Virus record (IMG/VR): IMGVR_UViG_3300032245_001860
Span: 1-64,000 of that record
DNA: 64,000 nucleotides
Strand: one strand, 5' to 3'
Position 1 is the first letter of the stretch. Each line of letters begins with the position of its first letter. Positions 2-47,680 of this stretch are shown here, in pieces. The notes under the pieces were generated by a model that saw only the letters and a list, made by a program, of their open reading frames with translations, made no database searches and had not been told where the DNA came from. A program made the position numbers and the translations under genes.

Positions 2-1045
2 GTCAAGCCAGAATCTGATGTACGCCTTCAGGACGCTTCGACCCTGACCAATGGCATGACCCTTACAAAGTCTGGTCTCAATTCGCTTCGGTCATTCACT
101 GACATTCCATCGTCCATGGTTTCGTTCTTGGAAGAGCGTGGGTTTGAAGAAGACTTGACCCGTTTTGTCAATTCCGAATTGAACCGCCGGGAACAAGACT
201 GGTCAAACGATGGCAAGGAATCAAGAGAATTCCGTGTCCGTGTCCGCCAAGATGAGAATGGCAACGATGCTGTACGGGCTGTTGTATCTGGTCGATATGG
301 TGTGATTGATAACCATGAGGCTATGGAAATGATTGCAAATTCTTTGCCTTCATTGTCTGATGCGCTTGCATCCCACATATCCAATGATGGAGATGATATC
401 TTTGGTAACGTGCTTTTACCAGACTACATGAAGAGTGAACCAGACTCTGATTATGGGGTAGGCATTGCATTCCGCAACAGCGAGATTAAGAATTCTACCT
501 TCAACATCTCACCGTTCCTGTTCCGTGCCATCTGCCTTAACGGTATGATTTGGGGTCGGCAGGATTCCAGTATCCAAATTAACCAAAAGCATCTTGGCAA
601 CATTGACCGTGCGGAATTGCAACATAAGGTTAACCATGCCGTCAAGGTTGCATTGACACAAGGCAATGACCTTTTGACTTTGCTTGGACATTCCAAGAAA
701 GTTAAGGTTGACAACCCATTGCAGGTGATTGCACAACTCTCCCGTGATAATGGTATGACCATTGAACAAGGACGTGCATGGCACAAGGGATACTTGGAAT
801 CCCTTGGTGAGGCTAACGGTCAACTACATGACCGTTCTGCATTCGGTATTGTCAACGGTTTGACCCGTTCTGCCCAACTTTACAAGGGTTCTACCCGTGA
901 AAGCATGGAAACAACCGCTTCTTTGATACTTTCACCTGCTATTGATGCAGATTTGCAGGCAATAAGCAAAAGATGGGGCAGAATTGCCGATAATGCATCA
1001 CAATTGAAGGAAAAAGTGGTGCAACAGTACGCTTATATAGGCTAA
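2..1045 (+). CDS. DUF932-family phage protein (5' end outside window)
   Basis: Frame is open from position 2; NSEI..STFNISPFLFRAICLNGMI motif and C-terminal F.IVNGLT resemble DUF932. Confidence 0.65.
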   Translation, partial: VKPESDVRLQDASTLTNGMTLTKSGLNSLRSFTDIPSSMVSFLEERGFEEDLTRFVNSELNRREQDWSNDGKESREFRVRVRQDENGNDAVRAVVSGRYGVIDNHEAMEMIANSLPSLSDALASHISNDGDDIFGNVLLPDYMKSEPDSDYGVGIAFRNSEIKNSTFNISPFLFRAICLNGMIWGRQDSSIQINQKHLGNIDRAELQHKVNHAVKVALTQGNDLLTLLGHSKKVKVDNPLQVIAQLSRDNGMTIEQGRAWHKGYLESLGEANGQLHDRSAFGIVNGLTRSAQLYKGSTRESMETTASLILSPAIDADLQAISKRWGRIADNASQLKEKVVQQYAYIG

Positions 1046-4613: not shown

Positions 4614-4772
4614 GAATTGTGATTTGTCAAGAGTATCCCCGGAGAAATCTGGGGATATTTTTTTATTTGAAGCTTTACCCTTGGGGTGATAATATTATCA
4701 CCCCAAATCTTTCATTAAATAACAAAAATAAATGTTTCAAACTGGCTTATTTTAGATATAATATGATAGAGT

Positions 4773-8315: not shown

Positions 8316-8383
8316 TGGTGGATAGCTTAAGTAGAGCAGAGGAACATAAGCCTTTGATATGGGTGCAAATCCCATTCCACCTT
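8316..8383 (+). tRNA. Degenerate tRNA-like element, CAT anticodon
   Basis: GGTGGA/TCCACC acceptor, ATGGG-TGCAAAT-CCCAT T arm, irregular anticodon arm. Confidence 0.5.
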
Positions 8384-8385
8384 TT

Positions 8386-8458
8386 GGGCGATTAGCTTAA
8401 TGGTTAAAGCAGGGGACTCATAATCCCTTGAGTGGGGGTTCGAGTCCCTCATCGCCCA
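8386..8458 (+). tRNA. tRNA with CAT anticodon (Ile2 likely, or Met)
   Basis: Acceptor GGGCGAT/ATCGCCC, anticodon arm GGGGA-CTCATAA-TCCCT, TTCGAGT T-loop. Confidence 0.92.
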
Positions 8459-8711
8459 TTGTTTCTGGTTGGTTGGTGTTTTGCATGTCCTATCTCTTCC
8501 CTCCATTAAAATTTCCAGAGAGAAATTATGGAGGGATTTTTTTATTTGAAAATCGAGCTTGGGGTGATTGAATAATCACCCCAATATTTCGAGATAAAAC
8601 ATACCACAATTGCCAGTTAAAGAATAAATTAGTTGATATAAATACACGCATTAGGTATACTATATTACGTGATGAAAATCACACAATGACAAAAGAAAGT
8701 CCTACAATAAA

Positions 8712-12670: not shown

Positions 12671-12774
12671 TGGGGTGATAATATTATCACCCCAAGATCC
12701 TTTTAGCAAATAATTAATTTTTCTTGCATCAGTATACCATTTGTGATATAAAAGAGTATCGAAAGGTTACTACA

Positions 12775-13177: not shown

Positions 13178-13450
13178 ATGAAGAAACCACATATCCTTAT
13201 TGAGCGTTTTCAGCCAACAACAGACAACACCATTTATCAGGTGTACTTTGCTAATGGCTCATCAAAAACAATCCTCTCTTCCAGTCCTTTCAAACAAGGT
13301 GCATATCAGAATGCTCACCGTGAAGCAAAGAAGAACAATGTTCCCTTGTATGAAACGTACTATGTAAAAACCATTGACCGAAATGGCTTTGAGAGCATCG
13401 TTCCTACCAAAGTTGTTGAAGTACCATTGGAGAAAACAACAACCAACTAA
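13178..13450 (+). CDS. Hypothetical protein (leaderless start)
   Basis: TTGACA-N17-TATCAT-N6-ATG. Confidence 0.65.
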   Translation: MKKPHILIERFQPTTDNTIYQVYFANGSSKTILSSSPFKQGAYQNAHREAKKNNVPLYETYYVKTIDRNGFESIVPTKVVEVPLEKTTTN

Positions 13451-14198: not shown

Positions 14199-14813
14199 TT
14201 ACCCACCCTCTTTTATAAAATCTTTTGAAATTACTTGATTGAACTTTCTTGGGTCATACCAGAAACATCCAAAACAAGTACCAAGATAGTTTTCGTTACC
14301 TGTAATCCAACCAGCAGAATAACCTAATCTTCTTGCATCATACCTTTTGTTTGTTTGTTCGCAGATATTACAATGTGTTCTTTTTGTATCATTGCAAGTT
14401 TTGTGTAAAGGTTGAAAATCATCTTCTTTTTGTTTGCTGATGTCTTCGTAAGTCTCAGGTGAATATCTACCATCCTTATGGTCACATTCTATTCGAGCGG
14501 CAGAATCTACAATTCTACATCTTTGTTTTTTTATGGATTTTCTAATATCACTTCGTATATTAGATTCTTTAGATTTATCTACAAAGCCATCAAGTTTTAT
14601 TGCAGTAAGTTTTCCACCAACAATAGTTTTTCTCAAAACATAGTCTTTGAGAGGCCCTCTGTCATCTTGTGCCCAACTACCATTTGTTGTATGGAAACTT
14701 ACACCAAAGTGATTCTGCAACTCTTCGAATGTTATCCATTCAGTTATTCCATCAACAGGCTTCGCATATTCAAAAAACATACGACCATATTCTGCTGGTT
14801 TTAGATTAGCCAT
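14199..14813 (-). CDS. HNH-type restriction endonuclease, NlaIII/IceA family
   Basis: IECDHKDGR, DFQPLHKTCNDTKR.HC..C, RYDA and C.GCFWYDP match the IceA1/R.NlaIII pattern; overlaps the MTase stop codon. Confidence 0.75.
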   Translation of the reverse strand: MANLKPAEYGRMFFEYAKPVDGITEWITFEELQNHFGVSFHTTNGSWAQDDRGPLKDYVLRKTIVGGKLTAIKLDGFVDKSKESNIRSDIRKSIKKQRCRIVDSAARIECDHKDGRYSPETYEDISKQKEDDFQPLHKTCNDTKRTHCNICEQTNKRYDARRLGYSAGWITGNENYLGTCFGCFWYDPRKFNQVISKDFIKEGG

Positions 14814-15510
14814 TTAGTTTACCGATTCTTTCTGTTGCTTTTGTAAAGTATGTTTCGTCCAACTCACAGCCAATGAATTTACGTTTGGTGTTATGACAAG
14901 CCACAGCACAAGAAGCAGAGCCAGCAAAACAATCCAAAACTAAATCACCTTCATTGGAATGTTTAGTAATTAAAGCTTGAAGTAGATTGAGAGGCTTTTG
15001 GGTAGGATGGAATCTATCTCTTTCATGACAGATTGCAAATTCATATATACCCTTATCATATTCGGAATGAAATGTTGGTTTCGAGCCTTTGATTGCAGTG
15101 AGAGCAATTTCTCTTGAATTAGTGAGGTAATTGATTTTCGAATTGATTGGAACTGGATTTGTCTTGACCCATTCTATAAATCTCAACTGCTTAAACTTAG
15201 CATCTTCAATCCATTTTTTAAGTGTTTCAATTTTCCAAAGGTCATAGAAACAAATAATCGTTCCACCGGGTTTTAGAATGCGATAACATTCTTCCATTAC
15301 CTTATCAAGAGCAAAAATCTCATTGTCCCATTCTCCAAACTCGTAGGACATTTTGAATCTTTCCACACCTTTTTCACCACAAGATTCAAAACCTGTAGGG
15401 CGAGAAATTGTATATGGTGGGTCAATCAAAACAAGATTGACACTTTTATCTTCTACTGTTGGCAAAAAATCCAAACAAGATTGATTTACCAGAGATATGT
15501 TTTCATTCAT
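14806..15510 (-). CDS. Beta-class N6-adenine/N4-cytosine DNA methyltransferase
   Basis: IDPPY, HPTQKP and VLDCFAGS motifs in beta order. Confidence 0.93.
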   Translation of the reverse strand: MNENISLVNQSCLDFLPTVEDKSVNLVLIDPPYTISRPTGFESCGEKGVERFKMSYEFGEWDNEIFALDKVMEECYRILKPGGTIICFYDLWKIETLKKWIEDAKFKQLRFIEWVKTNPVPINSKINYLTNSREIALTAIKGSKPTFHSEYDKGIYEFAICHERDRFHPTQKPLNLLQALITKHSNEGDLVLDCFAGSASCAVACHNTKRKFIGCELDETYFTKATERIGKLNG

Positions 15511-16913: not shown

Positions 16914-17120
16914 TTAACTGTACTTTATATTCTCTACTAAAACATAAAACTCCATGGGTGTTTTGTTCAATACATTACACAACTTAACCAAGTTTTTAGA
17001 ACTTGGAATCCTCTGACCTGATAACCAGCTACTAACATGAGGCTGAGAAGTGCCTACTCTTTCTGCTATTTCCTTCTGAGTTAAACCATTCTGTAGTTCC
17101 GATATAAAAAATCTTTTCAC
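16914..17120 (-). CDS. XRE-family HTH transcriptional regulator
   Basis: GLTQKEIAERVGTSQPHVSSWLSGQRIPS; GGAGG RBS before GTG at 17120. Confidence 0.88.
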   Translation of the reverse strand: MKRFFISELQNGLTQKEIAERVGTSQPHVSSWLSGQRIPSSKNLVKLCNVLNKTPMEFYVLVENIKYS

Positions 17121-17275
17121 ATTACAAACCTCCAAGCATAATAATACCACAATATACCACTGTAGACAAATATTATTTATGGGGTGATAATATTATCACC
17201 CCAAGCTGAGTAAATAAAGTAAATTCCATTATGACATATGTGATATAATTGGATATCAAAGACTGGGAGAATCAA

Positions 17276-17488
17276 ATGGATAAAAGGATGGAAGTTATCA
17301 TCTTACAAAAAGGTATGACACAAAAAGAGATAGCAGAGAGAGTGGGAGTACATCAACCCAAAGTTTCAGAATGGCTTAGAGGAGTAAGAATTCCAAATTC
17401 GAAGTTATTATATAAACTTGCTGAAGTCTTAGAAGAAGAACCAGCAGTGTTAGTAGATAAGTTAAAGCAAATATCAGAGTTAGAATAG
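17276..17488 (+). CDS. XRE-family HTH transcriptional regulator (paralogue, divergent)
   Basis: GMTQKEIAERVGVHQPKVSEWLRGVRIPN; GGGAG RBS. Confidence 0.88.
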   Translation: MDKRMEVIILQKGMTQKEIAERVGVHQPKVSEWLRGVRIPNSKLLYKLAEVLEEEPAVLVDKLKQISELE

Positions 17489-17955: not shown

Positions 17956-18156
17956 TTAGTAATCGTCTCCGTCATAACCACCATAGTCTTCATCGGTTCC
18001 GAAACCAGCAGAAGCCAATGCATCAGCATCCATCCAAGATTCATCCTCATAAGGCTCATCGCATTCCTGTTCTTCAAAGTCCTCTTCCCAATCTCTTGGG
18101 TCGAGGTCAACGCTTGGGAAAATTCTTGCTTCCAGTTCTGCTTCAGTGTAATCCAT
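17956..18156 (-). CDS. Very acidic 66-aa protein
   Basis: AAGGAG RBS; MDYTEAELE...DADALASAGFGTDEDY. Confidence 0.7.
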   Translation of the reverse strand: MDYTEAELEARIFPSVDLDPRDWEEDFEEQECDEPYEDESWMDADALASAGFGTDEDYGGYDGDDY

Positions 18157-18187
18157 CTCTATCTCCTTACTCCTAAAGTATACCACA

Positions 18188-18538
18188 TTATACTGAGGTG
18201 TCAACTGTATCCCAGCCAGCTGGAGCACCTTTCTTCCAATCAATTTCTTTTGTATCATTCCAAGTTGCAGGGCAATTAGATTCTACGAATAAAGCAAAGT
18301 CTGATGCCTCTTCGTCATCTCTAAGGTAATATACTACCGCTTCGTAGTATGACCCGTAATCGCTACCATCTTCACGCTTAATGCCAAACCAAGCACCTTC
18401 AGGAACATTAAGAAATATGTCCTTGAGCATCTGTACATACTTGCGAACCTCTGCTACATGAGCAGAATAATCATGCATATCCACACATTCTTCTTCGCAT
18501 GGGTTTGGTCCAAGGTAAAACCAGTTCTTTTTATCCAT
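18188..18538 (-). CDS. Hypothetical phage protein (leaderless start)
   Basis: LGPNPCEEEC and DYGSYYEAVVYY motifs; TATACT-N6-ATG. Confidence 0.7.
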   Translation of the reverse strand: MDKKNWFYLGPNPCEEECVDMHDYSAHVAEVRKYVQMLKDIFLNVPEGAWFGIKREDGSDYGSYYEAVVYYLRDDEEASDFALFVESNCPATWNDTKEIDWKKGAPAGWDTVDTSV

Positions 18539-18625
18539 GACGTAAGTATACCATAATATACTACCTGTTCAAGAAAAATTAATTTATTTGACAAAATTAT
18601 TTGGGGTGATTTTTATATCACCCCA

Positions 18626-18706
18626 AAAAAAGCCCAGCAATAAATTACTGAGCTTTTTCTGAAGGAGTTTGAAATGAATAACAAGTTGAAAATGAAAGGT
18701 TCAACA
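18626..18706 (-). ncRNA. Putative small antisense RNA complementary to an RBS+AUG
   Basis: TTGACA-N16-TATACT promoter (18739-18712), no sense ORF, terminator at 18626-18658; complementary to GAAGGAGTTTGAAATG. Confidence 0.6.
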
Positions 18707-18761
18707 TGTTAAGTATACCTGTTTTTCAAATAATGTCAAGGGGAATTTCTTCCCCTTGTTT

Positions 18762-19100
18762 TTAGTTTAATTTAGATGATTGGCAAATTATGCATTTACC
18801 AATAATGCCTACCTCATCAGTACCGTATGCCTCACGGTACATATTGGTGGCAATCATATTCACTACAGGATATGCTCTAAGCAATGCCTCTTCGTCGCAA
18901 ATAAGAATCAAGTCATCCTTAAGATTTACCACTTGGATAAGTTCACAACCTAATGCTTCGTATAGGGAATCAAGCGTAAACTCACCCTTGTATTCATAAA
19001 CGTCACGACTTGGCGTGATAACAAATGACTTGCCAGATTTAATCTGGTCAAGCATCACATTCAAAGCCAACACTGGAAGTCCAATCATCGTATACCTCAC
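18762..19100 (-). CDS. DUF3846-like protein
   Basis: LYEALGCELIQVV, LICDEEALL..PVVN.IAT and IIGKCII motifs. Confidence 0.65.
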   Translation of the reverse strand: MRYTMIGLPVLALNVMLDQIKSGKSFVITPSRDVYEYKGEFTLDSLYEALGCELIQVVNLKDDLILICDEEALLRAYPVVNMIATNMYREAYGTDEVGIIGKCIICQSSKLN

Positions 19101-19198
19101 TTACAGAATAAGTATACCAGATTATATCAGCGATGCAAATTTATTTAATTATTTGACAAAAGGATCTGGGGTGATAATATTATCACCCCAAGGTACAG

Positions 19199-20114: not shown

Positions 20115-20267
20115 CTACTTTTTTTTCCGCTCTTCTTTTTTCTCTTGGAAACAATCTTCACAGGCTCCCTACCACCTGTTAGTCTCCTCCCATCTCCAAC
20201 ATCTACCTTCACCTGCTCCAACATAGCAAGCACAATAACAACATTGTTTTCCATACTTGTTTTTCAT
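20115..20267 (-). pseudogene. Zn-ribbon small protein interrupted by an in-frame TAG at 20169-20171
   Basis: GGAGG RBS; MKNKYGKQCCYCACYVGAGEGRCWRWEETNRW*GACEDCFQEKKEERKKK. Confidence 0.6.
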
Positions 20268-21919: not shown

Positions 21920-21994
21920 TATACTACCATTGCAAGAAAAATTAATTTATTTGACAAAATACTTTGGGGTGATATCAATATCACCCCAAATAAC

Positions 21995-22330
21995 AAATAA
22001 ACCCCCAAGAAAATTCTTAGGGGGTTTATTTGATGGTTACACTATAGAGGATTGATTTGTGGTTAGCTGGACTTCAACCAGTACGGAACACAAGGGCAGT
22101 TCTTTCGATGGTCTCTGCCTCCGATGTTATCCTTGTCCTTAAAGGAGCATGATACCCAACCACAAATCATTATACTTGGAGATATTGTTTGCGTCAATAG
22201 TCTCCAAGGTTTCAGTAAAAGATTGTGGACTAAACCACTCCAAGGTTGCTACCCTTATTTGGACTACGCAATTAGTCCGAGCCGTTCTGGTCTTTTACTG
22301 GATGAAGGTTGCTAATTACTTCAACCTTAC
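21995..22330 (-). ncRNA. Putative ~335-nt multi-stem non-coding RNA
   Basis: TTGACA-N17-TATTAT promoter (22365-22337), at least five helices, terminator at 21995-22031. Confidence 0.6.
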
Positions 22331-22824: not shown

Positions 22825-24043
22825 TTATTTCCACATATTTTTAGGCTTGGTAGACCTTTCACCGGGCATATAGAATTTCTTAATCTTATTCTTGTTGTAT
22901 GTCCAGCGTCCAACCAATTCGCCTAAGGGATTTTCATCAGTAGCCTTGTAAATAGCAAAATACCAGCCTTCAAGCGCATATTTCTTTGCTGTTTCCTTAG
23001 CCTGAATCAAAGTGGTGCAAGGCGTTAAAGATTTGGTTTTATCCCAAGTTTCGCCGATAACGATTCTGTATAGTGTCATAGGTTAAGTATATCAGTTTAT
23101 ATCAAAAATGCAAGGAAAATTATTTTATTTGACATAAAAAAATGGGGTGGTTTTTATACCACCCCAAAATCCTGCCAACAATATAAATTATTAGCAGGAT
23201 AGAACTTTTTTCTAATTTACTCCAGTTTCCAGTCTGACGGAATATGATTTGTTTTTAGCCCATTGCATTCCAAACAAATCAAAAATTCCAATTACTAATA
23301 ACGCAATATGCCATTCTTCAAACTGACTATGAATATCAACTACACTGCCAAAAGTAAATTTGGTGTTTTCATAAAAGATTGAAAACATCAGAGCTGCAAC
23401 AAAAACCTGAACATACAAACATAACTTTTCATAACTCTTTAACTTCATAACTTTTCTCCTACACAGGTAGTATACCACAATATACTACCTGTGTTAATTA
23501 ATTTTAAGGAAGATTTGCGACAAAGTCACTCAGGAAGGAATCGTAATTTCTTTTAGAGTTATCCTTAAGAATACGCTCTATGGTCATGCGACTTTCGAGT
23601 AATTTGTAATGGGAATCATTGTTTTGTTTTTCGATGAGTTTTTCGATGGATTCTTTAAGCTCTTCTGACTTAACATAGAATGAAGCATCAATATCATCCA
23701 GTGTTGCGATAAAGTCTTCAGCAACCAAACCACCATGTTGAGATTTCTTGCCATGAGAGAGACGAGCAACCTCAGTAACAGGAACAAGCATCCAATCAAT
23801 CTTAGAATCAAGTGTGCCAATTCCAAGCAGATGAATTGCCATGTTGATAGTTTCCATCTGATTGAAGTTTTGCACAGAACTGTTAAGGTCAGTTACAGAA
23901 ACTTTCAATTGATAATCTTCACCATTGTAAACAAAATATTTAATCTTGTTCTTGATAATAAGAGAGTCACCCAAAATTTCTTTGAGCGATTCAAGACCAT
24001 AAGTGTTAATGCTTCGGTTTTTCATAACTGGATTGTATCTCAC
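22825..24043 (-). CDS. Hypothetical genes (22825-23079, 23212-~23448 membrane protein, 23504-~24025)
   Basis: Each has its own extended -10 promoter. Confidence 0.55.
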
Positions 24044-24061: not shown

Positions 24062-24113
24062 AAAAAAAGACCAGATATTTCTACCTGGTCTGAATGAAAG
24101 ACAAACTATGAGC
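24062..24113 (-). ncRNA. Putative ~50-nt antisense RNA complementary to an RBS+AUG
   Basis: TTGCAT-N16-TATAAT extended promoter (24147-24120); complementary to GAATGAAAGACAAACTATG; terminator AGACCAG/CTGGTCT. Confidence 0.55.
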
Positions 24114-24254
24114 ACACTTATTATATCAAAATATATTTATCATGCAAATTAATTTATTTCTTTATTCTGGGGTTATAATATTATAACCCCATGAGCTGTT
24201 TCGCAAATAAAAAAATATCCCTTGACAAGTGCCAAGGGATGTGATAGTGGAGTT

Positions 24255-44134: not shown

Positions 44135-45868
44135 TTAGTTTCCTTTTTTATAGTTTTTATTATTATACACACCTGCATAGGCCCAATTTTCATCTTTATC
44201 AGTCATTGGCCTTTCAGTGAGCTTGTCTATTGTTTGATTGTTATTTTCTTCTATTTCGTGTTTAGGAGCAAATAATCTTAATTGTGATCTGTTATTTTCT
44301 ATTTGTTTTTCATGAAGATCAAGAAGTGGTTGTGTTTTTAAGAACGGGATTATTTCATCATCACTGTAGAAATTTTTTCTATATCCACTTGGTATTCTAA
44401 AATCATTGCCTGTCTTTTCTTTATATTGAAATGCAAATTTACTTTTCTCAAAGAAATTTTCTATTTTATTTGCCACTAAAAAATAAAGATATTCAGGTTG
44501 TTTTTGATACCAAGACATGAATGGTTCTTTTGATTCTGAATCTTTATATTTTTCTTTTGCTTCTTCAAACTTTTTTGTAGCTGTTTCAAGTACACCATTG
44601 ACATCTAAATATCTTTCAAAATTGTGTGTAGTAAATGATTTTTTTAATGCTAATTCTGCTTTGTGTTCTAATGCAGTGTAGAAAGTGTTAGCGTAATCAT
44701 CAAGAGGATAATCTTCTATTGTATATGCTTCATTATCCCAATTAAATGCACTACCTGATCTTTGTAATCCATCATGCATTTCACTAATTGCAGCATCTAT
44801 AATATCTGGAATATGTGAGCCATAAAGATTTGATTCAGCGAATTGTTCATGATTCCAAACAGGAGATATAATTCCAAATCTGTTAAAATCTTCTGTTACA
44901 TCATCATCAATAGCATCATATTCTGATTCATCTGGGCCATAAATAGATTCTGTTATAGCGTATCCAATTTGATCAGGTTCATATGTCCAATAAATTCTTT
45001 CTTGCCAATCTTCAAAATGATCAGCTACAGGATTTATATTAGATTGTTTTTTGATATCTTCTCTGTCGTCAAAAAATTCTCTAATTTTTTCCACTAAATC
45101 ATCATCTTCAACTTTAGCATTATTTGGGCCCTTGATTTGAATTACTTTATCACCTTGTATTTCAATTGTTGCTTTAGGTTGATTTTGTGGATCTCTTAAG
45201 GAATAGATTCTTGAATGTCCTCTTCTCACTGCATCCCAATATCCAGCAACACAGTGATGCATTTTTGCACCTTCAACATCAAGATCATTTTCTGATTTGA
45301 CATTTACCATATTCCAACCATCAGGATATGCCATTACTACTTCTCGGTCAGCTGGATTGTAAAATTTACCTCCACCTTTACCTATAAGTATTTGCTCCCA
45401 TTCATCTGTGTCTTCAACCACTTGTTCCCAGGACTTCAATCCAAGATTATAATCAGGGTCATTTGTTTCAATATTGTTGACAAAATCTTGCATATGGAGA
45501 GCTTGTTCTAAAAAATTAGCATGCTCACCATTCATACCACCTGAAGGAATATTATGATCATATTCACCATTAGGTTTTTGAGGTTGTATTCTCCAGCCTT
45601 TTAATTTATGAAATAACCAGTTTTTAAATCTTTCATTTGTGAAGTTGTCTAATATGAATTTTTCTTCTCTTGTTGGTCTATTTTGACTTGAAAGATTTTC
45701 TAATTCTTGCAATGTGATATTTGGATTTTGTTTGATTGCGCCTAACATTTTACCTTTGGCAGCATTATCAAATTTGGGGTCAGAAAAAACAGCTAAAATA
45801 GATTCATTTATGCCTTGAGTTCTAAGCTTTTCTACTTCATCTTGTAAACTTGCAAATCTGTACCACAT
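44135..45868 (-). CDS. PcfJ-like domain protein with MWYR N-terminus
   Basis: LDVEGAKMHHCVAGY...IYSLRD..QPKATIEI...QIKGPNN. Confidence 0.78.
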   Translation of the reverse strand: MWYRFASLQDEVEKLRTQGINESILAVFSDPKFDNAAKGKMLGAIKQNPNITLQELENLSSQNRPTREEKFILDNFTNERFKNWLFHKLKGWRIQPQKPNGEYDHNIPSGGMNGEHANFLEQALHMQDFVNNIETNDPDYNLGLKSWEQVVEDTDEWEQILIGKGGGKFYNPADREVVMAYPDGWNMVNVKSENDLDVEGAKMHHCVAGYWDAVRRGHSRIYSLRDPQNQPKATIEIQGDKVIQIKGPNNAKVEDDDLVEKIREFFDDREDIKKQSNINPVADHFEDWQERIYWTYEPDQIGYAITESIYGPDESEYDAIDDDVTEDFNRFGIISPVWNHEQFAESNLYGSHIPDIIDAAISEMHDGLQRSGSAFNWDNEAYTIEDYPLDDYANTFYTALEHKAELALKKSFTTHNFERYLDVNGVLETATKKFEEAKEKYKDSESKEPFMSWYQKQPEYLYFLVANKIENFFEKSKFAFQYKEKTGNDFRIPSGYRKNFYSDDEIIPFLKTQPLLDLHEKQIENNRSQLRLFAPKHEIEENNNQTIDKLTERPMTDKDENWAYAGVYNNKNYKKGN

Positions 45869-45871
45869 AGT

Positions 45872-47680
45872 TTAAGCCTTGTTCGCCAATCTAAATCTTT
45901 TATTATTGAATGAATATCTCCACTCATTCACGCCTTCAGTAAATAATTTTTGCTGTTGTCTTCTACTTAAGAAATCTTGGTAATAATCTTCTGTTCCTCT
46001 ATACAATGCTTCACTTGGAGTAACTGGTGAAACATCTAAATTAATAGATAGTTTATTTGCAATATCATAAAACTCTTTTGGCATATTGTTTCTTATATAG
46101 GTATACAAAGCTCTATAAAAATAAACAGGATAAACATCATAAATATTTTCATATTCTTTGAGTTGATGATAACCTCTTGAATCTGGCCTCTCATATGGTT
46201 GATTTGCTAATTCATTTATTTCATCATCACTCATATTTTCAAGATTTAATTTGACAGGTTTGTTTCCAGGATTAAATTCTTCACTTACTGCTGCTTCTTT
46301 ATAATCTCTAATTTTTTCTAATTCTTCTGAGAGAGCTTCTTTGTATTTATGTCTTATATCATCTATATTAAGACCGCTTATTATAATTTCTCTGTTTGTT
46401 CCTAAAGTACCAACTTGAGATGCATAGTCCTTAATTTTTTCTAAATCTTTACGAATATACATATCGCCAAGTAAAGAAATTAATTCATCAAATCTATCAT
46501 CATCAGGTATTTCTTGATAAGTTTTATAATAACCAGCATTATCTACCCCGACTTGACTGATTAAATATTCAACTGGCAAGTCTCTGTAAAGGTCATCATA
46601 ATCTCTTTCAATTGGCCTGTAACGAACACCCAATTCGTCAGTCATTGTTTCATCATTTTCAGGATTTAAATAATCTGCAATTGCATACAAAGCATCTTGT
46701 TCAGACATATTCTGATTCAGGTTCAGGTCTTCATTGAGATCATGTTTAGAATAAAAATTATTTTGTTCAATCCAGTAAAGAGCTAATTTTTTATACTCTG
46801 GTTTGGGTGGTTTATTGCCTTTGCCTTGAATTTGCTTTACTTTGTCAGGCAATCCTATTTCTATAGTAACATGTGGTTTGTTTGATTCATCTCTTAAAGA
46901 ATAAGTGTCGCTAATGCCTTGTTCATATAAGCCATGGTAATTATTTGTGCCTGTACAGTGACCCATATTTTGACCTTCAGCATCAAAATCTCTTTCTTGG
47001 GTAAGTTTGACCATCATCCAATCATTGTATTCTTCAGGTAATCCTAAAGATTTAACTGTCTGTGCATCAAAAATCATTACTACATTTGGGTCAACTATTT
47101 TGCCATTTTCTTTCTTGATTTTAGAATATGTTGCACCTGGTTCTTGATTACTTAATTCTTCATGCCATATTTCACTGGCTCTACTTGCTTGATCTAAATT
47201 CATAGAAAAAATATTGAATCTTGGGTTTTCACTTACATATTCAACATACCAATCTAAAATATGATAAAGCTCATTTGTAACACCGATAATTGGTCCTATA
47301 GCAATATGTGAAAATTTAGGATAACTGAATTTTTCTGGGTCATGTTGATTTGGTCTGTAAGAAGGTAAAGCTACTCTTTCAACCCATTTATAAAAATTAG
47401 CTTTTTGTTCTTCGGAAATATTCATTCCTGATAATCTTGTGTCTAAATCTGCTAATAATCTTAATTCGTCATTAGATACTTTTTGTAATTGATTAGTTTG
47501 GAATTTGCCTTGTAATTCATCCCAAGGCATAAGAGGATTTTGCATCAAGGCTCCAATATATTTACCTCTTAATGGTATATCGGTCATTGCTTGTAGGTTA
47601 TCAATTGTGTCATCGCTTACACCTTTAGATTTAAGTGTTTCAAAAGCTCGTTCTACGTTTTGTGCAAGTCTATACCACAT
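45872..47680 (-). CDS. PcfJ-like domain protein (paralogue) with MWYR N-terminus
   Basis: EGQNMGHCTG...YSLRDESNKPHVTIEI...QIQGKGN. Confidence 0.78.
   Translation of the reverse strand: MWYRLAQNVERAFETLKSKGVSDDTIDNLQAMTDIPLRGKYIGALMQNPLMPWDELQGKFQTNQLQKVSNDELRLLADLDTRLSGMNISEEQKANFYKWVERVALPSYRPNQHDPEKFSYPKFSHIAIGPIIGVTNELYHILDWYVEYVSENPRFNIFSMNLDQASRASEIWHEELSNQEPGATYSKIKKENGKIVDPNVVMIFDAQTVKSLGLPEEYNDWMMVKLTQERDFDAEGQNMGHCTGTNNYHGLYEQGISDTYSLRDESNKPHVTIEIGLPDKVKQIQGKGNKPPKPEYKKLALYWIEQNNFYSKHDLNEDLNLNQNMSEQDALYAIADYLNPENDETMTDELGVRYRPIERDYDDLYRDLPVEYLISQVGVDNAGYYKTYQEIPDDDRFDELISLLGDMYIRKDLEKIKDYASQVGTLGTNREIIISGLNIDDIRHKYKEALSEELEKIRDYKEAAVSEEFNPGNKPVKLNLENMSDDEINELANQPYERPDSRGYHQLKEYENIYDVYPVYFYRALYTYIRNNMPKEFYDIANKLSINLDVSPVTPSEALYRGTEDYYQDFLSRRQQQKLFTEGVNEWRYSFNNKRFRLANKA

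What the first reader, a model, noticed from the sequence alone, without database searches (positions are those of the whole stretch)
18626..18739. Transcription unit making only a small RNA antisense to a canonical RBS+AUG
Seen: a near-consensus TTGACA-N16-TATACT promoter drives ~80 nt with a 5' hairpin (loop CCUUUCAUU), a single-stranded UUAUUCAUUUCAAACUCCUUC complementary to GAAGGAG-TTTGAA-ATG-AATAA, and a terminator. There is no sense ORF. Together with 5643, 8192, 10665, 21995, 24062 and 27240 this makes about seven RNAs exposing CAU and/or CCU(U/C) sequence. Inference: a phage battery of trans-acting antisense RNAs silencing host (possibly defence) genes at initiation, apparently undescribed.
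Basis: partly seen in the sequence, partly recalled or inferred. Interest (0 to 1): 0.82.

Follow-up and report, generated by a model that had tools for sequence, protein, structure and literature searches.

The report
Orphan small-RNA cassette in jumbo phage
An uncultured freshwater giant phage carries a 137-base module with its own strong promoter and terminator that should make an 80-base non-coding RNA exposing a stretch complementary to a ribosome-binding site, but no target, no expression data and no family of similar RNAs could be shown, so it is a plausible but ordinary candidate phage small RNA.

Summary
On the minus strand there is a TTGACA-N16-TATACT promoter, a stem-loop starting at the predicted +1 (G18705), a 24-nt unpaired track containing CAU and CUCCUUC, and an intrinsic terminator with U7. 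Four natural versions (91-100% identical) fold the same way, and the terminator stem carries a compensatory change.

The complementarity to an RBS plus AUG is only the opposite strand of the same locus. No trans target was found. That sequence is a generic strong initiation region, present at unrelated gene starts in 26 other viral contigs and 7 genomes.

The plus-strand 12-codon ORF has no promoter and sits just after a terminator. It is cut to 7 codons in one relative. The minus-strand 20-codon ORF is lost in two relatives.

The unit is a lineage-specific module set between PeSL-like promoter/stem-loop cassettes in a hyperplastic early region. About 45 relatives whose sequence continues past the neighbour gene lack it.

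The "battery of seven" is heterogeneous: a tRNA end, UTR hairpins, gene terminators, one structured RNA and one other ORF-less unit. None is homologous to this unit.

Best reading, at about 0.4: an early base-pairing sRNA with an unknown target. The main rival is a neutral, gene-less cassette.

The parts
18737..18758 (.). GGGG...CCCC stem-loop directly after the stop of the upstream gene (18762-19088, minus). It serves as that gene's terminator and is the stem-loop of a PeSL-type promoter. Its 3' arm overlaps the -35. On the plus strand it is followed by T5.
   Evidence: The same architecture occurs at the promoter of the leaderless gene at 13178.
18712..18739 (-). Promoter: -35 TTGACA (18739-18734), 16-nt spacer, -10 TATACT (18717-18712).
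   Evidence: 11 of 12 matches. Both hexamers are invariant in all 4 versions; only spacer position 18729 varies.
18705..18705 (-). Predicted transcription start, the 7th nt after the -10 hexamer.
   Evidence: Inferred from the phage's own rule: 12 ORFs start with ATG exactly 6 nt after a -10, against 0.85 expected.
18685..18705 (-). 5'-terminal stem-loop of the RNA, GUUGAA-9 nt-UUCAAC. The DNA inverted repeat extends to 11 bp, 18710-18700 and 18690-18680.
   Evidence: The stem is invariant except 18706. The loop varies at 3 of 9 positions.
18661..18684 (-). Unpaired 24-nt track holding CAU (18676-18674) and the anti-SD CUCCUUC (18667-18661).
   Evidence: Unpaired in the MFE and centroid folds of all four versions. 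Within it only one A/C substitution varies; a one-base deletion in L012 lies just downstream at 18659.
18625..18654 (-). Intrinsic terminator: a 7-bp stem with one G.U pair (a C.A mismatch on the plus strand), a loop, and U7.
   Evidence: L012 has G-C>A-U and G.U>G-C in the stem. L011 and runs X2 have 18647 A>G, which adds a pair.
18603..18624 (.). Canonical cassette hairpin (GGGGTGAT...ATCACCCC) that opens the next promoter cassette. It marks the right boundary of the module and a recombination breakpoint.
18538..18572 (-). Promoter of the downstream gene (TTGAAC-N16-TATACT with TG) and its leaderless ATG at 18538.
   Evidence: Promoter, 6-nt gap and N-terminus are kept in L012.
18661..18712 (+). 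Plus-strand SD GAAGGAG (18661-18667) and 12-codon mini-ORF (ATG 18674 to TAA 18710-18712). Judged a by-product of the minus-strand track.
   Evidence: It is truncated to 7 codons in L012, and no plus-strand promoter lies between 17851 and 19153.

Best explanation
The 137 bases between the stop codon of gene 18762-19088 and the next cassette hairpin (18761-18625) form a lineage-specific, self-contained early transcription module without a protein gene. Host sigma-70 RNA polymerase should start at about G18705 and stop at the U7 tract near 18626. The product would be an RNA of about 80 nt with three parts. A stem-loop sits at its very 5' end, which is inferred to protect it from 5'-end-dependent decay. 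A 24-nt unpaired track carries CAU and CUCCUUC. An intrinsic terminator hairpin closes it.

The most likely function is a base-pairing regulatory RNA. Its unpaired track would anneal across the Shine-Dalgarno and start codon of one or more SD-led mRNAs, of the host or of the phage, and block 30S binding. The target is unknown.

Shown here: the promoter, fold and terminator anatomy; its preservation in four natural versions; and the absence of a conserved ORF on either strand. Inferred: transcription, the TSS, the stabilising role of the 5' hairpin, pairing at initiation regions, and any biological effect.
For: - The promoter matches 11 of 12 consensus positions and shares the GGTATACTTA context of the phage's early promoters. 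Both hexamers are invariant in four versions.
- All four versions fold identically, z = -4.1 to -6.6.
- The terminator stem has a compensatory G-C>A-U change plus two changes that add or strengthen pairs. The G.U pair in the stem is a C.A mismatch on the plus strand, which points to minus-strand use.
- Variable positions fall in the hairpin loops (5 of about 18) more than in the unpaired track (2 of about 26).
- Neither strand keeps an ORF. The minus-strand ATG is AAG in L002 and L012. The plus-strand ORF has a stop at codon 8 in L012.
- The plus strand has no promoter, and a terminator abuts its SD.
- The module is organised like the neighbouring protein-coding modules: PeSL promoter, then body, then own terminator, then the next cassette hairpin.
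- The same early block holds another stand-alone RNA gene with covariation support, so RNA genes do occur in these cassettes.
- By a rough estimate of mine, a 7-nt anti-SD with CAU at ideal spacing in a given 26-nt track has a chance of about 4e-4.
Against: - There is no expression evidence. The only metatranscriptome with relatives covers 18080-18596 but about 0 over 18609-19010, and its strain carries different sequence beyond the cassette hairpin.
- No target was found. The best in-window duplex is -23 kcal/mol, and 8% of shuffled seeds do as well.
- The exact complement is unique to the locus itself.
- The complementary sequence is a generic strong initiation region found at unrelated gene starts.
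- Only four versions exist, and they differ little. Between the window and L012 the unit differs at about 8%. Synonymous sites in the adjacent, recently shared 3' part of the upstream gene differ at about 10%. Purifying selection is therefore not demonstrated.
- About 45 relatives whose sequence continues past the neighbour gene lack the unit.
- One of the two changes in the track lies between the anti-SD and anti-AUG parts.
Confidence: 0.4

Rival explanations
1. Neutral, gene-less cassette. The module is a by-product of recombination between the repeated promoter/stem-loop cassettes: a working promoter and terminator left with no gene between them. It may well be transcribed, but the RNA does nothing. 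Its apparent conservation reflects recent common ancestry of a mosaic segment.
For: - It sits in a hyperplastic region with about 26 PeSL-like cassettes.
- It is present in only four close versions and absent from about 45 relatives.
- The high-identity segment shared with L012 runs from about 18862 to exactly the end of the unit (18625). To the right, identity falls to about 60%.
- Divergence in the unit (about 8%) equals the local synonymous rate (about 10%).
- A second short ORF-less unit exists at 24148-24068.
- No target was found.
Against: - A perfect 11-bp inverted repeat placed exactly at the start of the transcript is not expected in a deletion scar.
- The terminator stem shows compensatory and pair-improving changes.
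- The anti-SD and CAU at ideal spacing are not expected by chance.
- PeSL-PeSL recombination is described as leaving a single hybrid cassette, not two cassettes with an 80-nt body between them (PMC2839356).
- No longer gene whose ends match the unit was found in 100 fetched loci.
Confidence: 0.3
2. Transcriptional insulator or leader for the downstream leaderless gene. Leaderless genes need transcripts that start exactly at the ATG. The strong promoter plus terminator upstream would absorb or stop read-through from gene 18762-19088, or the terminator would be a regulated attenuator feeding the downstream operon. The RNA itself would have no trans role.
For: - The downstream gene starts 6 nt after its own -10 and has no SD.
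- Two terminator-like hairpins in tandem lie between the unit and that promoter.
- The second ORF-less unit (24148-24068) also sits immediately upstream of a promoter followed 6 nt later by an in-frame ATG (codon 7 of ORF 23504-24043).
- A relative's RNA-library contig runs through a cassette hairpin into the gene.
Against: - Other leaderless genes do without such a unit; a gene terminator plus the cassette hairpin suffices.
- Insulation needs a terminator, not an extra near-consensus promoter.
- No alternative (antiterminator) fold is evident in an 80-nt RNA whose MFE and centroid structures coincide.
- A read-through transcript would carry the downstream ATG without an SD.
Confidence: 0.12
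3. Cis-antisense pair or plus-strand minigene. The plus strand would be transcribed and its ideal SD plus 12-codon ORF translated, as a peptide, a ribosome- or tRNA-sequestering minigene, or a type-I-toxin-like product. The minus-strand RNA would be its antisense repressor, in the manner of P22 sar or type I antitoxins.
For: - The SD is perfect (GAAGGAG), with a 6-nt spacer, an ATG and an A-rich start.
- The stem-loop 18737-18758 has its better T-run on the plus strand.
- Three of the four window-versus-L002 changes are synonymous, conservative or in the SD-ATG spacer.
- The plus strand also gives a hairpin-plus-terminator arrangement.
Against: - No plus-strand promoter lies between 17851 and 19153. 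The TTGACA at 18588 faces TTTTTA or TTTTAT in the window and TAATTC in L012.
- A terminator, perfect on the plus strand in L012, ends in a T-run that abuts the SD.
- The ORF is cut to 7 codons in L012.
- The peptide is 12 residues, basic and hydrophilic, unlike type I toxins.
- Nothing lies downstream on the plus strand except the antisense of a gene.
Confidence: 0.07
4. DNA-level site. The 11-bp inverted repeat with a 9-bp spacer at +1 to +26 would be an operator for a dimeric phage regulator, for example one of the two XRE-type HTH proteins encoded 1.3 kb away. That regulator would control the promoter, and the transcript would be incidental.
For: - The arms are conserved and the spacer varies in four versions.
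- Two divergent HTH genes lie at 16914-17488.
- The repeat extends 5 bp upstream of the predicted TSS, so it is longer in DNA than in the RNA.
Against: - The repeat occurs nowhere else in the window.
- An operator controlling a promoter with no gene only moves the question.
- The window and L011 carry a mismatch in one arm.
Confidence: 0.04

Closest known systems
PeSL (promoter-early stem-loop) cassettes of T4-type phages (Arbiol et al. 2010, PMC2839356; Comeau et al. 2014, PMC4122927)
   Same: Both are strong sigma-70-like promoters with AT-rich upstream sequence and GGGG...CCCC stem-loops placed before, on or between the promoter hexamers. Both are repeated many times in a hyperplastic early region full of ORFans. 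Both serve as breakpoints of insertions, deletions and replacements between close relatives. The unit's own promoter has the stem-loop overlapping the -35, and its right border is a canonical cassette hairpin.
   Different: Described PeSLs end in an SD and the start codon of a protein gene. Here the module body is 80 nt of non-coding sequence, and many neighbouring cassettes drive leaderless genes (ATG 6 nt after the -10) rather than SD-led ones. The phage is not a close T4 relative; its rIIA is at most 31% identical to any cultured phage.
Antisense RNAs of temperate phages that occlude an RBS: P22 sar, P1/P7 c4, lambda OOP (from my knowledge of the literature)
   Same: They are short (about 70-80 nt) phage RNAs with their own promoter and terminator, and they pair with a Shine-Dalgarno/start region.
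   Different: Those RNAs have a defined, expressed sense gene (ant, cII), encoded opposite or nearby. Here the only perfectly complementary sequence is an unexpressed-looking 12-codon (7 in L012) ORF at the same locus.
CU-rich anti-SD trans sRNAs such as cyanobacterial PsrR1 (RF02701) and RsaE/RoxS
   Same: The architecture is the same: an unpaired CUCCU-type motif a few nucleotides upstream of an intrinsic terminator, which pairs with ribosome-binding sites. The unit aligns end to end with the PsrR1 model at exactly the predicted transcript borders.
   Different: The score is 22.7 bits against a gathering score of 42, so it is not a member. Sequence similarity is limited to CUCCU and the terminator. 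The unit is phage-encoded and its target is unknown.
sRNAs predicted or found in virulent and jumbo phages (summarised in PMC8244752; prophage examples DicF and IpeX from my knowledge)
   Same: It is a stand-alone small transcript in a phage genome with a proposed base-pairing role.
   Different: There is no homology. For virulent phages the functions are themselves mostly unknown, as PMC8244752 states.

Membership tests
PeSL-type regulatory cassette (T4-type phages) | Strong sigma-70-like promoter with AT-rich upstream region | tested here: met
   The promoter matches 11 of 12 positions. The next cassette has the conserved AT-rich TTGTCAAATAAATTAATTTTTC upstream of its -35.
PeSL-type regulatory cassette (T4-type phages) | Adjacent or overlapping stem-loop, often GGGG...CCCC, acting as terminator or attenuator | tested here: met
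   The 18737-18758 stem overlaps the -35. The 18603-18624 hairpin is one of about 26 copies whose stem covaries. Terminator activity itself was not tested.
PeSL-type regulatory cassette (T4-type phages) | Repeated in hyperplastic regions and marking indel or replacement breakpoints between relatives | tested here: met
   The module is absent from about 45 relatives, in which divergence starts right after the stop codon. The mosaic breakpoint with L012 falls at 18625.
PeSL-type regulatory cassette (T4-type phages) | 3' end carries the SD and start codon of a downstream ORF(an) | tested here: not met
   No conserved ORF follows the unit's promoter. This is a PeSL-like promoter with a non-coding body.
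Rfam PsrR1 (RF02701), and any Rfam 15 family | Covariance-model score at or above the family's gathering score | tested here: not met
   No family reaches its gathering score. The best full-length minus-strand match is PsrR1 at 22.7 bits against 42. No CRISPR-repeat family appears among matches up to E = 10.
Type I toxin-antitoxin pair | Expressed small hydrophobic toxin ORF overlapped by or paired with an antisense RNA | tested here: not met
   The plus-strand ORF is 12 residues and hydrophilic, is truncated to 7 in L012, and has no promoter.
Cis-antisense RBS-occluding phage RNA (sar/c4 type) | A transcribed sense mRNA whose RBS is complementary to the small RNA | tested here: inconclusive
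   Complementarity is perfect only at the unit's own locus. No sense promoter was found by consensus scan. No strand-specific RNA data were available.
Trans-acting base-pairing sRNA | Own promoter, intrinsic terminator and an accessible seed | tested here: met
Trans-acting base-pairing sRNA | Demonstrated transcript and at least one validated or statistically supported target | tested here: not met
   The informative part of the metatranscriptome lacks the unit. The best in-window target is not better than shuffles give (8%). The host genome is unknown.

The most novel reading that the evidence does not exclude
The phage starts many early genes as leaderless mRNAs: 12 ORFs have ATG exactly 6 nt after a -10 hexamer. 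From the same promoter class it would make an abundant early RNA whose exposed track mimics the ribosome's anti-SD plus an anti-AUG. In this reading the RNA acts as a broad silencer of SD-led, mainly host, translation initiation, while the phage's leaderless early messages escape. That would be an RNA-based host translation shut-off coupled to leaderless phage expression.
Probability: 0.05. Interest if true: 0.85.

Novelty: new member of a known kind. Interest (0 to 1): 0.3.

Why it matters
Functions of small RNAs in virulent and jumbo phages are almost unknown. If real, this would be a clean minimal example: a single promoter, an 80-nt RNA and an exposed anti-initiation-region seed, carried as a mobile cassette in a phage lineage abundant in lakes. 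It would show that PeSL-type cassettes shuttle RNA genes as well as ORFans.

As it stands it is a reasonable candidate for experiment, not a discovery. The proposed battery of host-silencing RNAs is not supported.

The context found along the way may be of more general interest than the unit itself. It comprises PeSL-like cassettes outside the T4 group, systematic leaderless early genes, and a covarying cloverleaf-like RNA at 22168-22000.

Tried and rejected
1. Homology to known phages and plasmids: no DNA match.
2. Rfam at gathering and at E <= 10: no family, and no CRISPR-repeat (RNA anti-CRISPR-like) match.
3. Paralogues: a covariance model of the unit finds none in the window or in 56 related loci. 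blastn finds none either.
4. More versions: three viral-contig pattern scans and one metagenome scan give only four distinct versions. One extra 20-mer hit (L100) is an unrelated coding sequence.
5. A full-length gene starting MNNKLKMKG in viral contigs: none but the locus itself.
6. Host or other targets. The 18- and 21-nt complement is a generic gene start in unrelated taxa. The longest match is 26 nt, at an SDR gene start in a Methylophilaceae MAG. About a 3-10% chance of such an extension among 7 hits is my estimate. That protein is on record on only two contigs; the one shown is that MAG's own assembly, which gives no link to the phage's lakes. I treat it as a lead only.
7. In-window target prediction with RNAduplex: not better than shuffled seeds.
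8. Minus-strand leaderless 20-codon ORF: rejected. The gap to the -10 is 4 nt, not 6. The ATG is absent in L002 and L012, and the stop is lost in L011.
9. Expression: the one RNA run is uninformative for this unit.
10. Test for purifying selection: the unit's divergence is not distinguishable from the local synonymous rate.

Full report
**What the window is.** The window equals bases 1-64000 of a 315,852-bp uncultured viral contig, IMGVR_UViG_3300032245_001860. The contig comes from freshwater, and about 20 lake metagenomes hold near-identical DNA. It encodes rIIA and rIIB. It has no DNA match in GenBank phages or in PLSDB plasmids, and its rIIA is at most 31% identical to that of any cultured phage. 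The host is unknown.

**The observation.** Genes around the finding lie on the minus strand. Read on that strand, the order of features is as follows.
- The upstream gene (18762-19088) ends at its stop codon.
- A GGGG...CCCC stem-loop follows at 18758-18737, and its 3' arm runs into a -35 TTGACA (18739-18734).
- After 16 nt comes a -10 TATACT (18717-18712).
- An inverted repeat has arms at 18710-18700 and 18690-18680, with loop CCTTTCATT.
- An unpaired track contains CAT (18676-18674) and CTCCTTC (18667-18661).
- A 7-bp stem-loop (18654-18631) is followed by a T-run to 18625.
- The next promoter cassette begins at the hairpin 18624-18603.

The promoter matches 11 of 12 consensus positions. It shares the extended context GGTATACTTA with the phage's other early promoters.

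The RNA folds into a 5' hairpin, a 24-nt single-stranded stretch and a terminator. The fold is -21 kcal/mol, z = -4.8, and none of 200 shuffles folds as well.

**Where the transcript starts.** Twelve ORFs of at least 30 codons begin with ATG exactly 6 nt after a -10 hexamer. A first-order Markov null expects 0.85, and all other gaps are at background. The same TATACT-6 nt-ATG arrangement is kept in dozens of relatives and at the downstream gene in L012.

This gives an internal rule that +1 is the 7th nt after the -10. Applied here, the RNA starts at G18705, the first base of the stem GUUGAA. The ATG at 18707-18705, which opens a 20-codon minus-strand ORF in the window, is therefore not at the leaderless position. 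Its gap to the -10 is 4 nt, not 6.

**Comparative evidence.** Searches with the neighbouring proteins and with DNA patterns covered IMG/VR and JGI metagenomes. They yielded 55 metagenome loci and six viral-contig loci with the upstream gene. Only four distinct versions of the unit turned up:
- the window itself;
- L002 (96.6% identical over 116 nt);
- L011 (97.4%);
- L012 (91.4%; its neighbour gene is 85.6% identical in DNA).

In about 45 other relatives whose sequence continues past that gene, the sequence after its stop codon is different. Those relatives have a different terminator, a different cassette hairpin and a different leaderless gene.

The unit is thus a lineage-specific 137-bp module. 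It lies between a stop codon and a cassette hairpin.

**Pattern of change in the four versions.**
- Both promoter hexamers are invariant. One spacer position varies, and the same variant is seen in the runs.
- The 5' stem varies at one position only. That position is T.T in the window and L011 and a proper A-T pair in L002 and L012, and it lies upstream of +1.
- The 9-nt loop varies at 3 positions. CAU becomes GAU in L002, so the loop CAU carries no constraint.
- The unpaired track and the A-run after it show one A/C change and one 1-nt deletion in about 26 nt.
- The terminator stem in L012 has G-C>A-U (both sides changed) and G.U>G-C. In L011 a loop base changes so that one more pair forms.

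All four versions fold identically. The G.U pair of the window's terminator is a C.A mismatch on the plus strand, which favours use on the minus strand.

**Limits of that evidence.** The identity between the window and L012 is mosaic. It is about 80% in the 5' half of the upstream gene, 96% from about 18860 to the stop, about 92% across the unit, and about 60% to the right of 18625.

Within the recently shared segment, synonymous sites differ at roughly 10% (3 of 30) and the unit at about 8%. I therefore cannot show purifying selection. What I can show is that the changes that did occur spare or repair every structural element. The right-hand breakpoint coincides exactly with the end of the unit.

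**The plus strand.** The sequence said to be the target, GAAGGAG-TTTGAA-ATG-AATAA, is the plus strand of the same DNA. It occurs nowhere else in the window and only once in the whole 316-kb contig. It opens a 12-codon ORF, MNNKLKMKGSTC. Four points count against that ORF being the product.
- No sigma-70-like promoter lies on the plus strand between 17851 and 19153. The cassette's TTGACA at 18588 faces TTTTTA or TTTTAT here, and TAATTC in L012.
- The minus-strand terminator also reads as a terminator on the plus strand. It is a perfect one in L012, and its T-run abuts the SD.
- Codon 8 is TAA in L012, leaving 7 codons.
- Nothing follows on that strand except a terminator and the antisense of a gene.

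Two points count for it. The stem-loop 18737-18758 has its better T-run on the plus strand. The few window-versus-L002 changes are synonymous, conservative or in the SD-ATG spacer. I keep this reading as a minor rival.

**Is there a trans target?** The 18-mer GAAGGAGTT(T/G)GAAATGAA sits at ordinary gene starts in 26 other, unrelated viral contigs. The 21-mer sits in 7 unrelated bacterial genomes: Chitinophaga, Clostridia, Geobacter, Bacteroidales, Anaerolineales, Anaeromicropila and Methylophilaceae. It is a generic strong initiation region, not a signature of one gene.

The longest match is 26 nt, at the start of a short-chain dehydrogenase gene in a Methylophilaceae MAG. By my estimate this is a 3-10% event among 7 hits. 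That protein is recorded on only two contigs; the one shown is that MAG's own assembly, so nothing links it to the phage's lakes. I treat it as a lead, not a finding.

Within the window, the best predicted duplex is with the initiation region of a 32-codon ORF at 20267, at -23 kcal/mol. In 8% of trials a shuffled seed does at least as well.

**Expression.** One freshwater metatranscriptome holds relatives. Its contigs cover 18080-18596 but essentially nothing over 18609-19010. Its strain continues with different sequence beyond the cassette hairpin, so it lacks the unit. The data are uninformative, not negative.

**Context: a PeSL-like system.** About 26 copies of a cassette lie between 1134 and 27222. 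Each has a hairpin GGGGTGRT-loop-AYCACCCC whose stem covaries (GAT/ATC, GGT/ACC, TAT/ATA). In the complete copies a conserved AT-rich TTGTCAAATAAAT... element follows, then a -35 and a -10.

This matches the promoter-early stem-loop cassettes of T4-type phages. Those are strong sigma-70-like promoters with AT-rich upstream sequence and GGGG...CCCC stem-loops in variable positions, including overlapping the -35. They are concentrated in hyperplastic regions and mediate insertion, deletion and replacement of ORFans (PMC2839356, PMC4122927).

The unit's own promoter is of the subclass with the stem-loop on the -35, like the promoter of the leaderless gene at 13178. What differs from described PeSL modules is the cargo: 80 nt of non-coding sequence instead of an ORFan.

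**The 'battery'.**
- 5643 is the last base of tRNA-Lys.
- 8192 is the region just before the promoter of a tRNA cluster.
- 10665 is a set of hairpins between a stop codon and the promoter of a leaderless gene.
- 27240 is the terminator of a leaderless 42-codon membrane ORF.
- 21995 is the terminator of a different RNA of about 170 nt (22168-22000). That RNA has a 13-bp closing stem, three arms and covariation in four relatives.
- 24062 is a second short ORF-less unit, with promoter 24148-24120 and terminator 24091-24068.

They share no sequence or structure with the unit. CAU and CCUU are too short to mean anything in AT-rich loops. So there is no family. The phage does, however, carry at least one other genuine stand-alone RNA gene in the same block, which raises the prior that this unit is one too.

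**Known families.** No Rfam family reaches its threshold. The best end-to-end match is cyanobacterial PsrR1 at 22.7 bits against a gathering score of 42. The similarity consists of an unpaired CUCCU a few bases before a terminator. That is a resemblance in design, not membership. No CRISPR-repeat model matches, which argues against a solitary-repeat RNA anti-CRISPR.

**Verdict.** The feature is real and is most simply read as a small early RNA gene carried as a mobile cassette. The most likely mechanism, at about 0.4, is occlusion of a translation initiation region by its exposed CUCCUUC...CAU track, with the target unknown.

A neutral gene-less cassette (about 0.3) cannot be excluded with four close versions and no RNA data. 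Smaller rivals are an insulator or leader for the downstream leaderless gene (about 0.12), a cis-antisense or minigene pair (about 0.07) and a DNA operator (about 0.04).

It is a new member of a known kind, a candidate phage sRNA in a PeSL-type cassette.

Noticed in passing
window 1134-27222 (e.g. 4683-4704, 12672-12693, 18603-18624, 19168-19189, 21966-21987): About 26 copies of a regulatory cassette. Each has a hairpin GGGGTGRT-loop-AYCACCCC with a covarying stem; in the complete copies a conserved AT-rich TTGTCAAATAAAT... element and a sigma-70-type promoter follow. It is closely analogous to the PeSL cassettes of T4-type phages, but occurs in a phage only remotely related to them. Relatives use the same layout with a different hairpin sequence (AGGTCTGG...CCAGACCT).
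   Followed up: partly
window ATG at 18538(-), 21193(-), 25539(-), 25952(-), 27442(-), 42938(-), 10795(+), 13178(+), 26966(+), 31405(+); also 26847(+), a 27-codon ORF below the 30-codon cut-off; relatives in L003, L013-L053: Systematic leaderless gene starts. Twelve ORFs of at least 30 codons begin with ATG exactly 6 nt after a -10 hexamer and have no Shine-Dalgarno, against 0.85 expected; other spacings are at background. The arrangement is conserved in relatives. Other genes in the same block use strong SDs.
   Followed up: partly
window 22000-22197 (minus strand): A stand-alone RNA gene. The promoter TTGACG-N17-TATAAT is followed by about 170 nt ending in a terminator. The RNA has a 13-bp closing stem, three arms (one T-arm-like, CUGG-UUGAAGU-CCAG) and a conserved GGAGGCAGAGACCAUCGAAAGAACUGCC core. 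Five pairs show compensatory changes among four relatives (80-98% identical). There is no Rfam match and no ARAGORN call. This may be a new structured phage RNA.
   Followed up: partly
window 24068-24148 (minus strand): A second short ORF-less unit. The promoter TTTGCA-N17-TATAAT is followed by about 55 nt and a terminator with U7. It lies immediately upstream of a second promoter-like site (TTGCGC-N17-TACAAT) that is followed 6 nt later by an in-frame ATG, codon 7 of ORF 23504-24043. No relative was available for comparison.
   Followed up: partly
window 14199-15510 (minus strand): A phage-borne restriction-modification-like pair: an ICEA (NlaIII-like endonuclease family) protein and an N6/N4 DNA methylase. 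They are inserted in the opposite orientation between plus-strand early genes.
   Followed up: no
window 16914-17150 (-) and 17249-17488 (+): Two divergently transcribed small ORFs with similar helix-turn-helix-like sequence (...TQKEIAERVG...QP.VS.WL.G.RIP.S..L.KL...). They sit exactly at the switch between the plus-strand and minus-strand gene blocks and resemble a repressor/antirepressor switch. The family assignment was not tested.
   Followed up: no
L067 7407-7432 (Methylophilaceae MAG DATBRG010000004.1) versus window 18660-18685: A 26-nt exact identity between the plus strand of the unit and the SD plus first codons of a short-chain dehydrogenase gene. It is the longest of the generic initiation-region matches. 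It may be chance, or a lead to a host or target.
   Followed up: partly
window 8316-8383: A fifth tRNA-like gene is detected by the Rfam tRNA model (39.4 bits) but not by ARAGORN. It lies directly before tRNA-Met(CAU) at 8385-8459.
   Followed up: no
window 56-1045, 44135-45868, 45872-47680: A DUF932 protein and two PcfJ-like proteins. I recall these families mainly from conjugative elements, and here they are encoded in a jumbo phage.
   Followed up: no
window 18862 and 18625, compared with L012: There is a sharp mosaic structure. Identity to L012 jumps from about 80% to 96% inside the upstream gene at about 18862. It drops to about 60% exactly at the cassette hairpin after the unit. This is consistent with cassette-mediated recombination.
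   Followed up: yes
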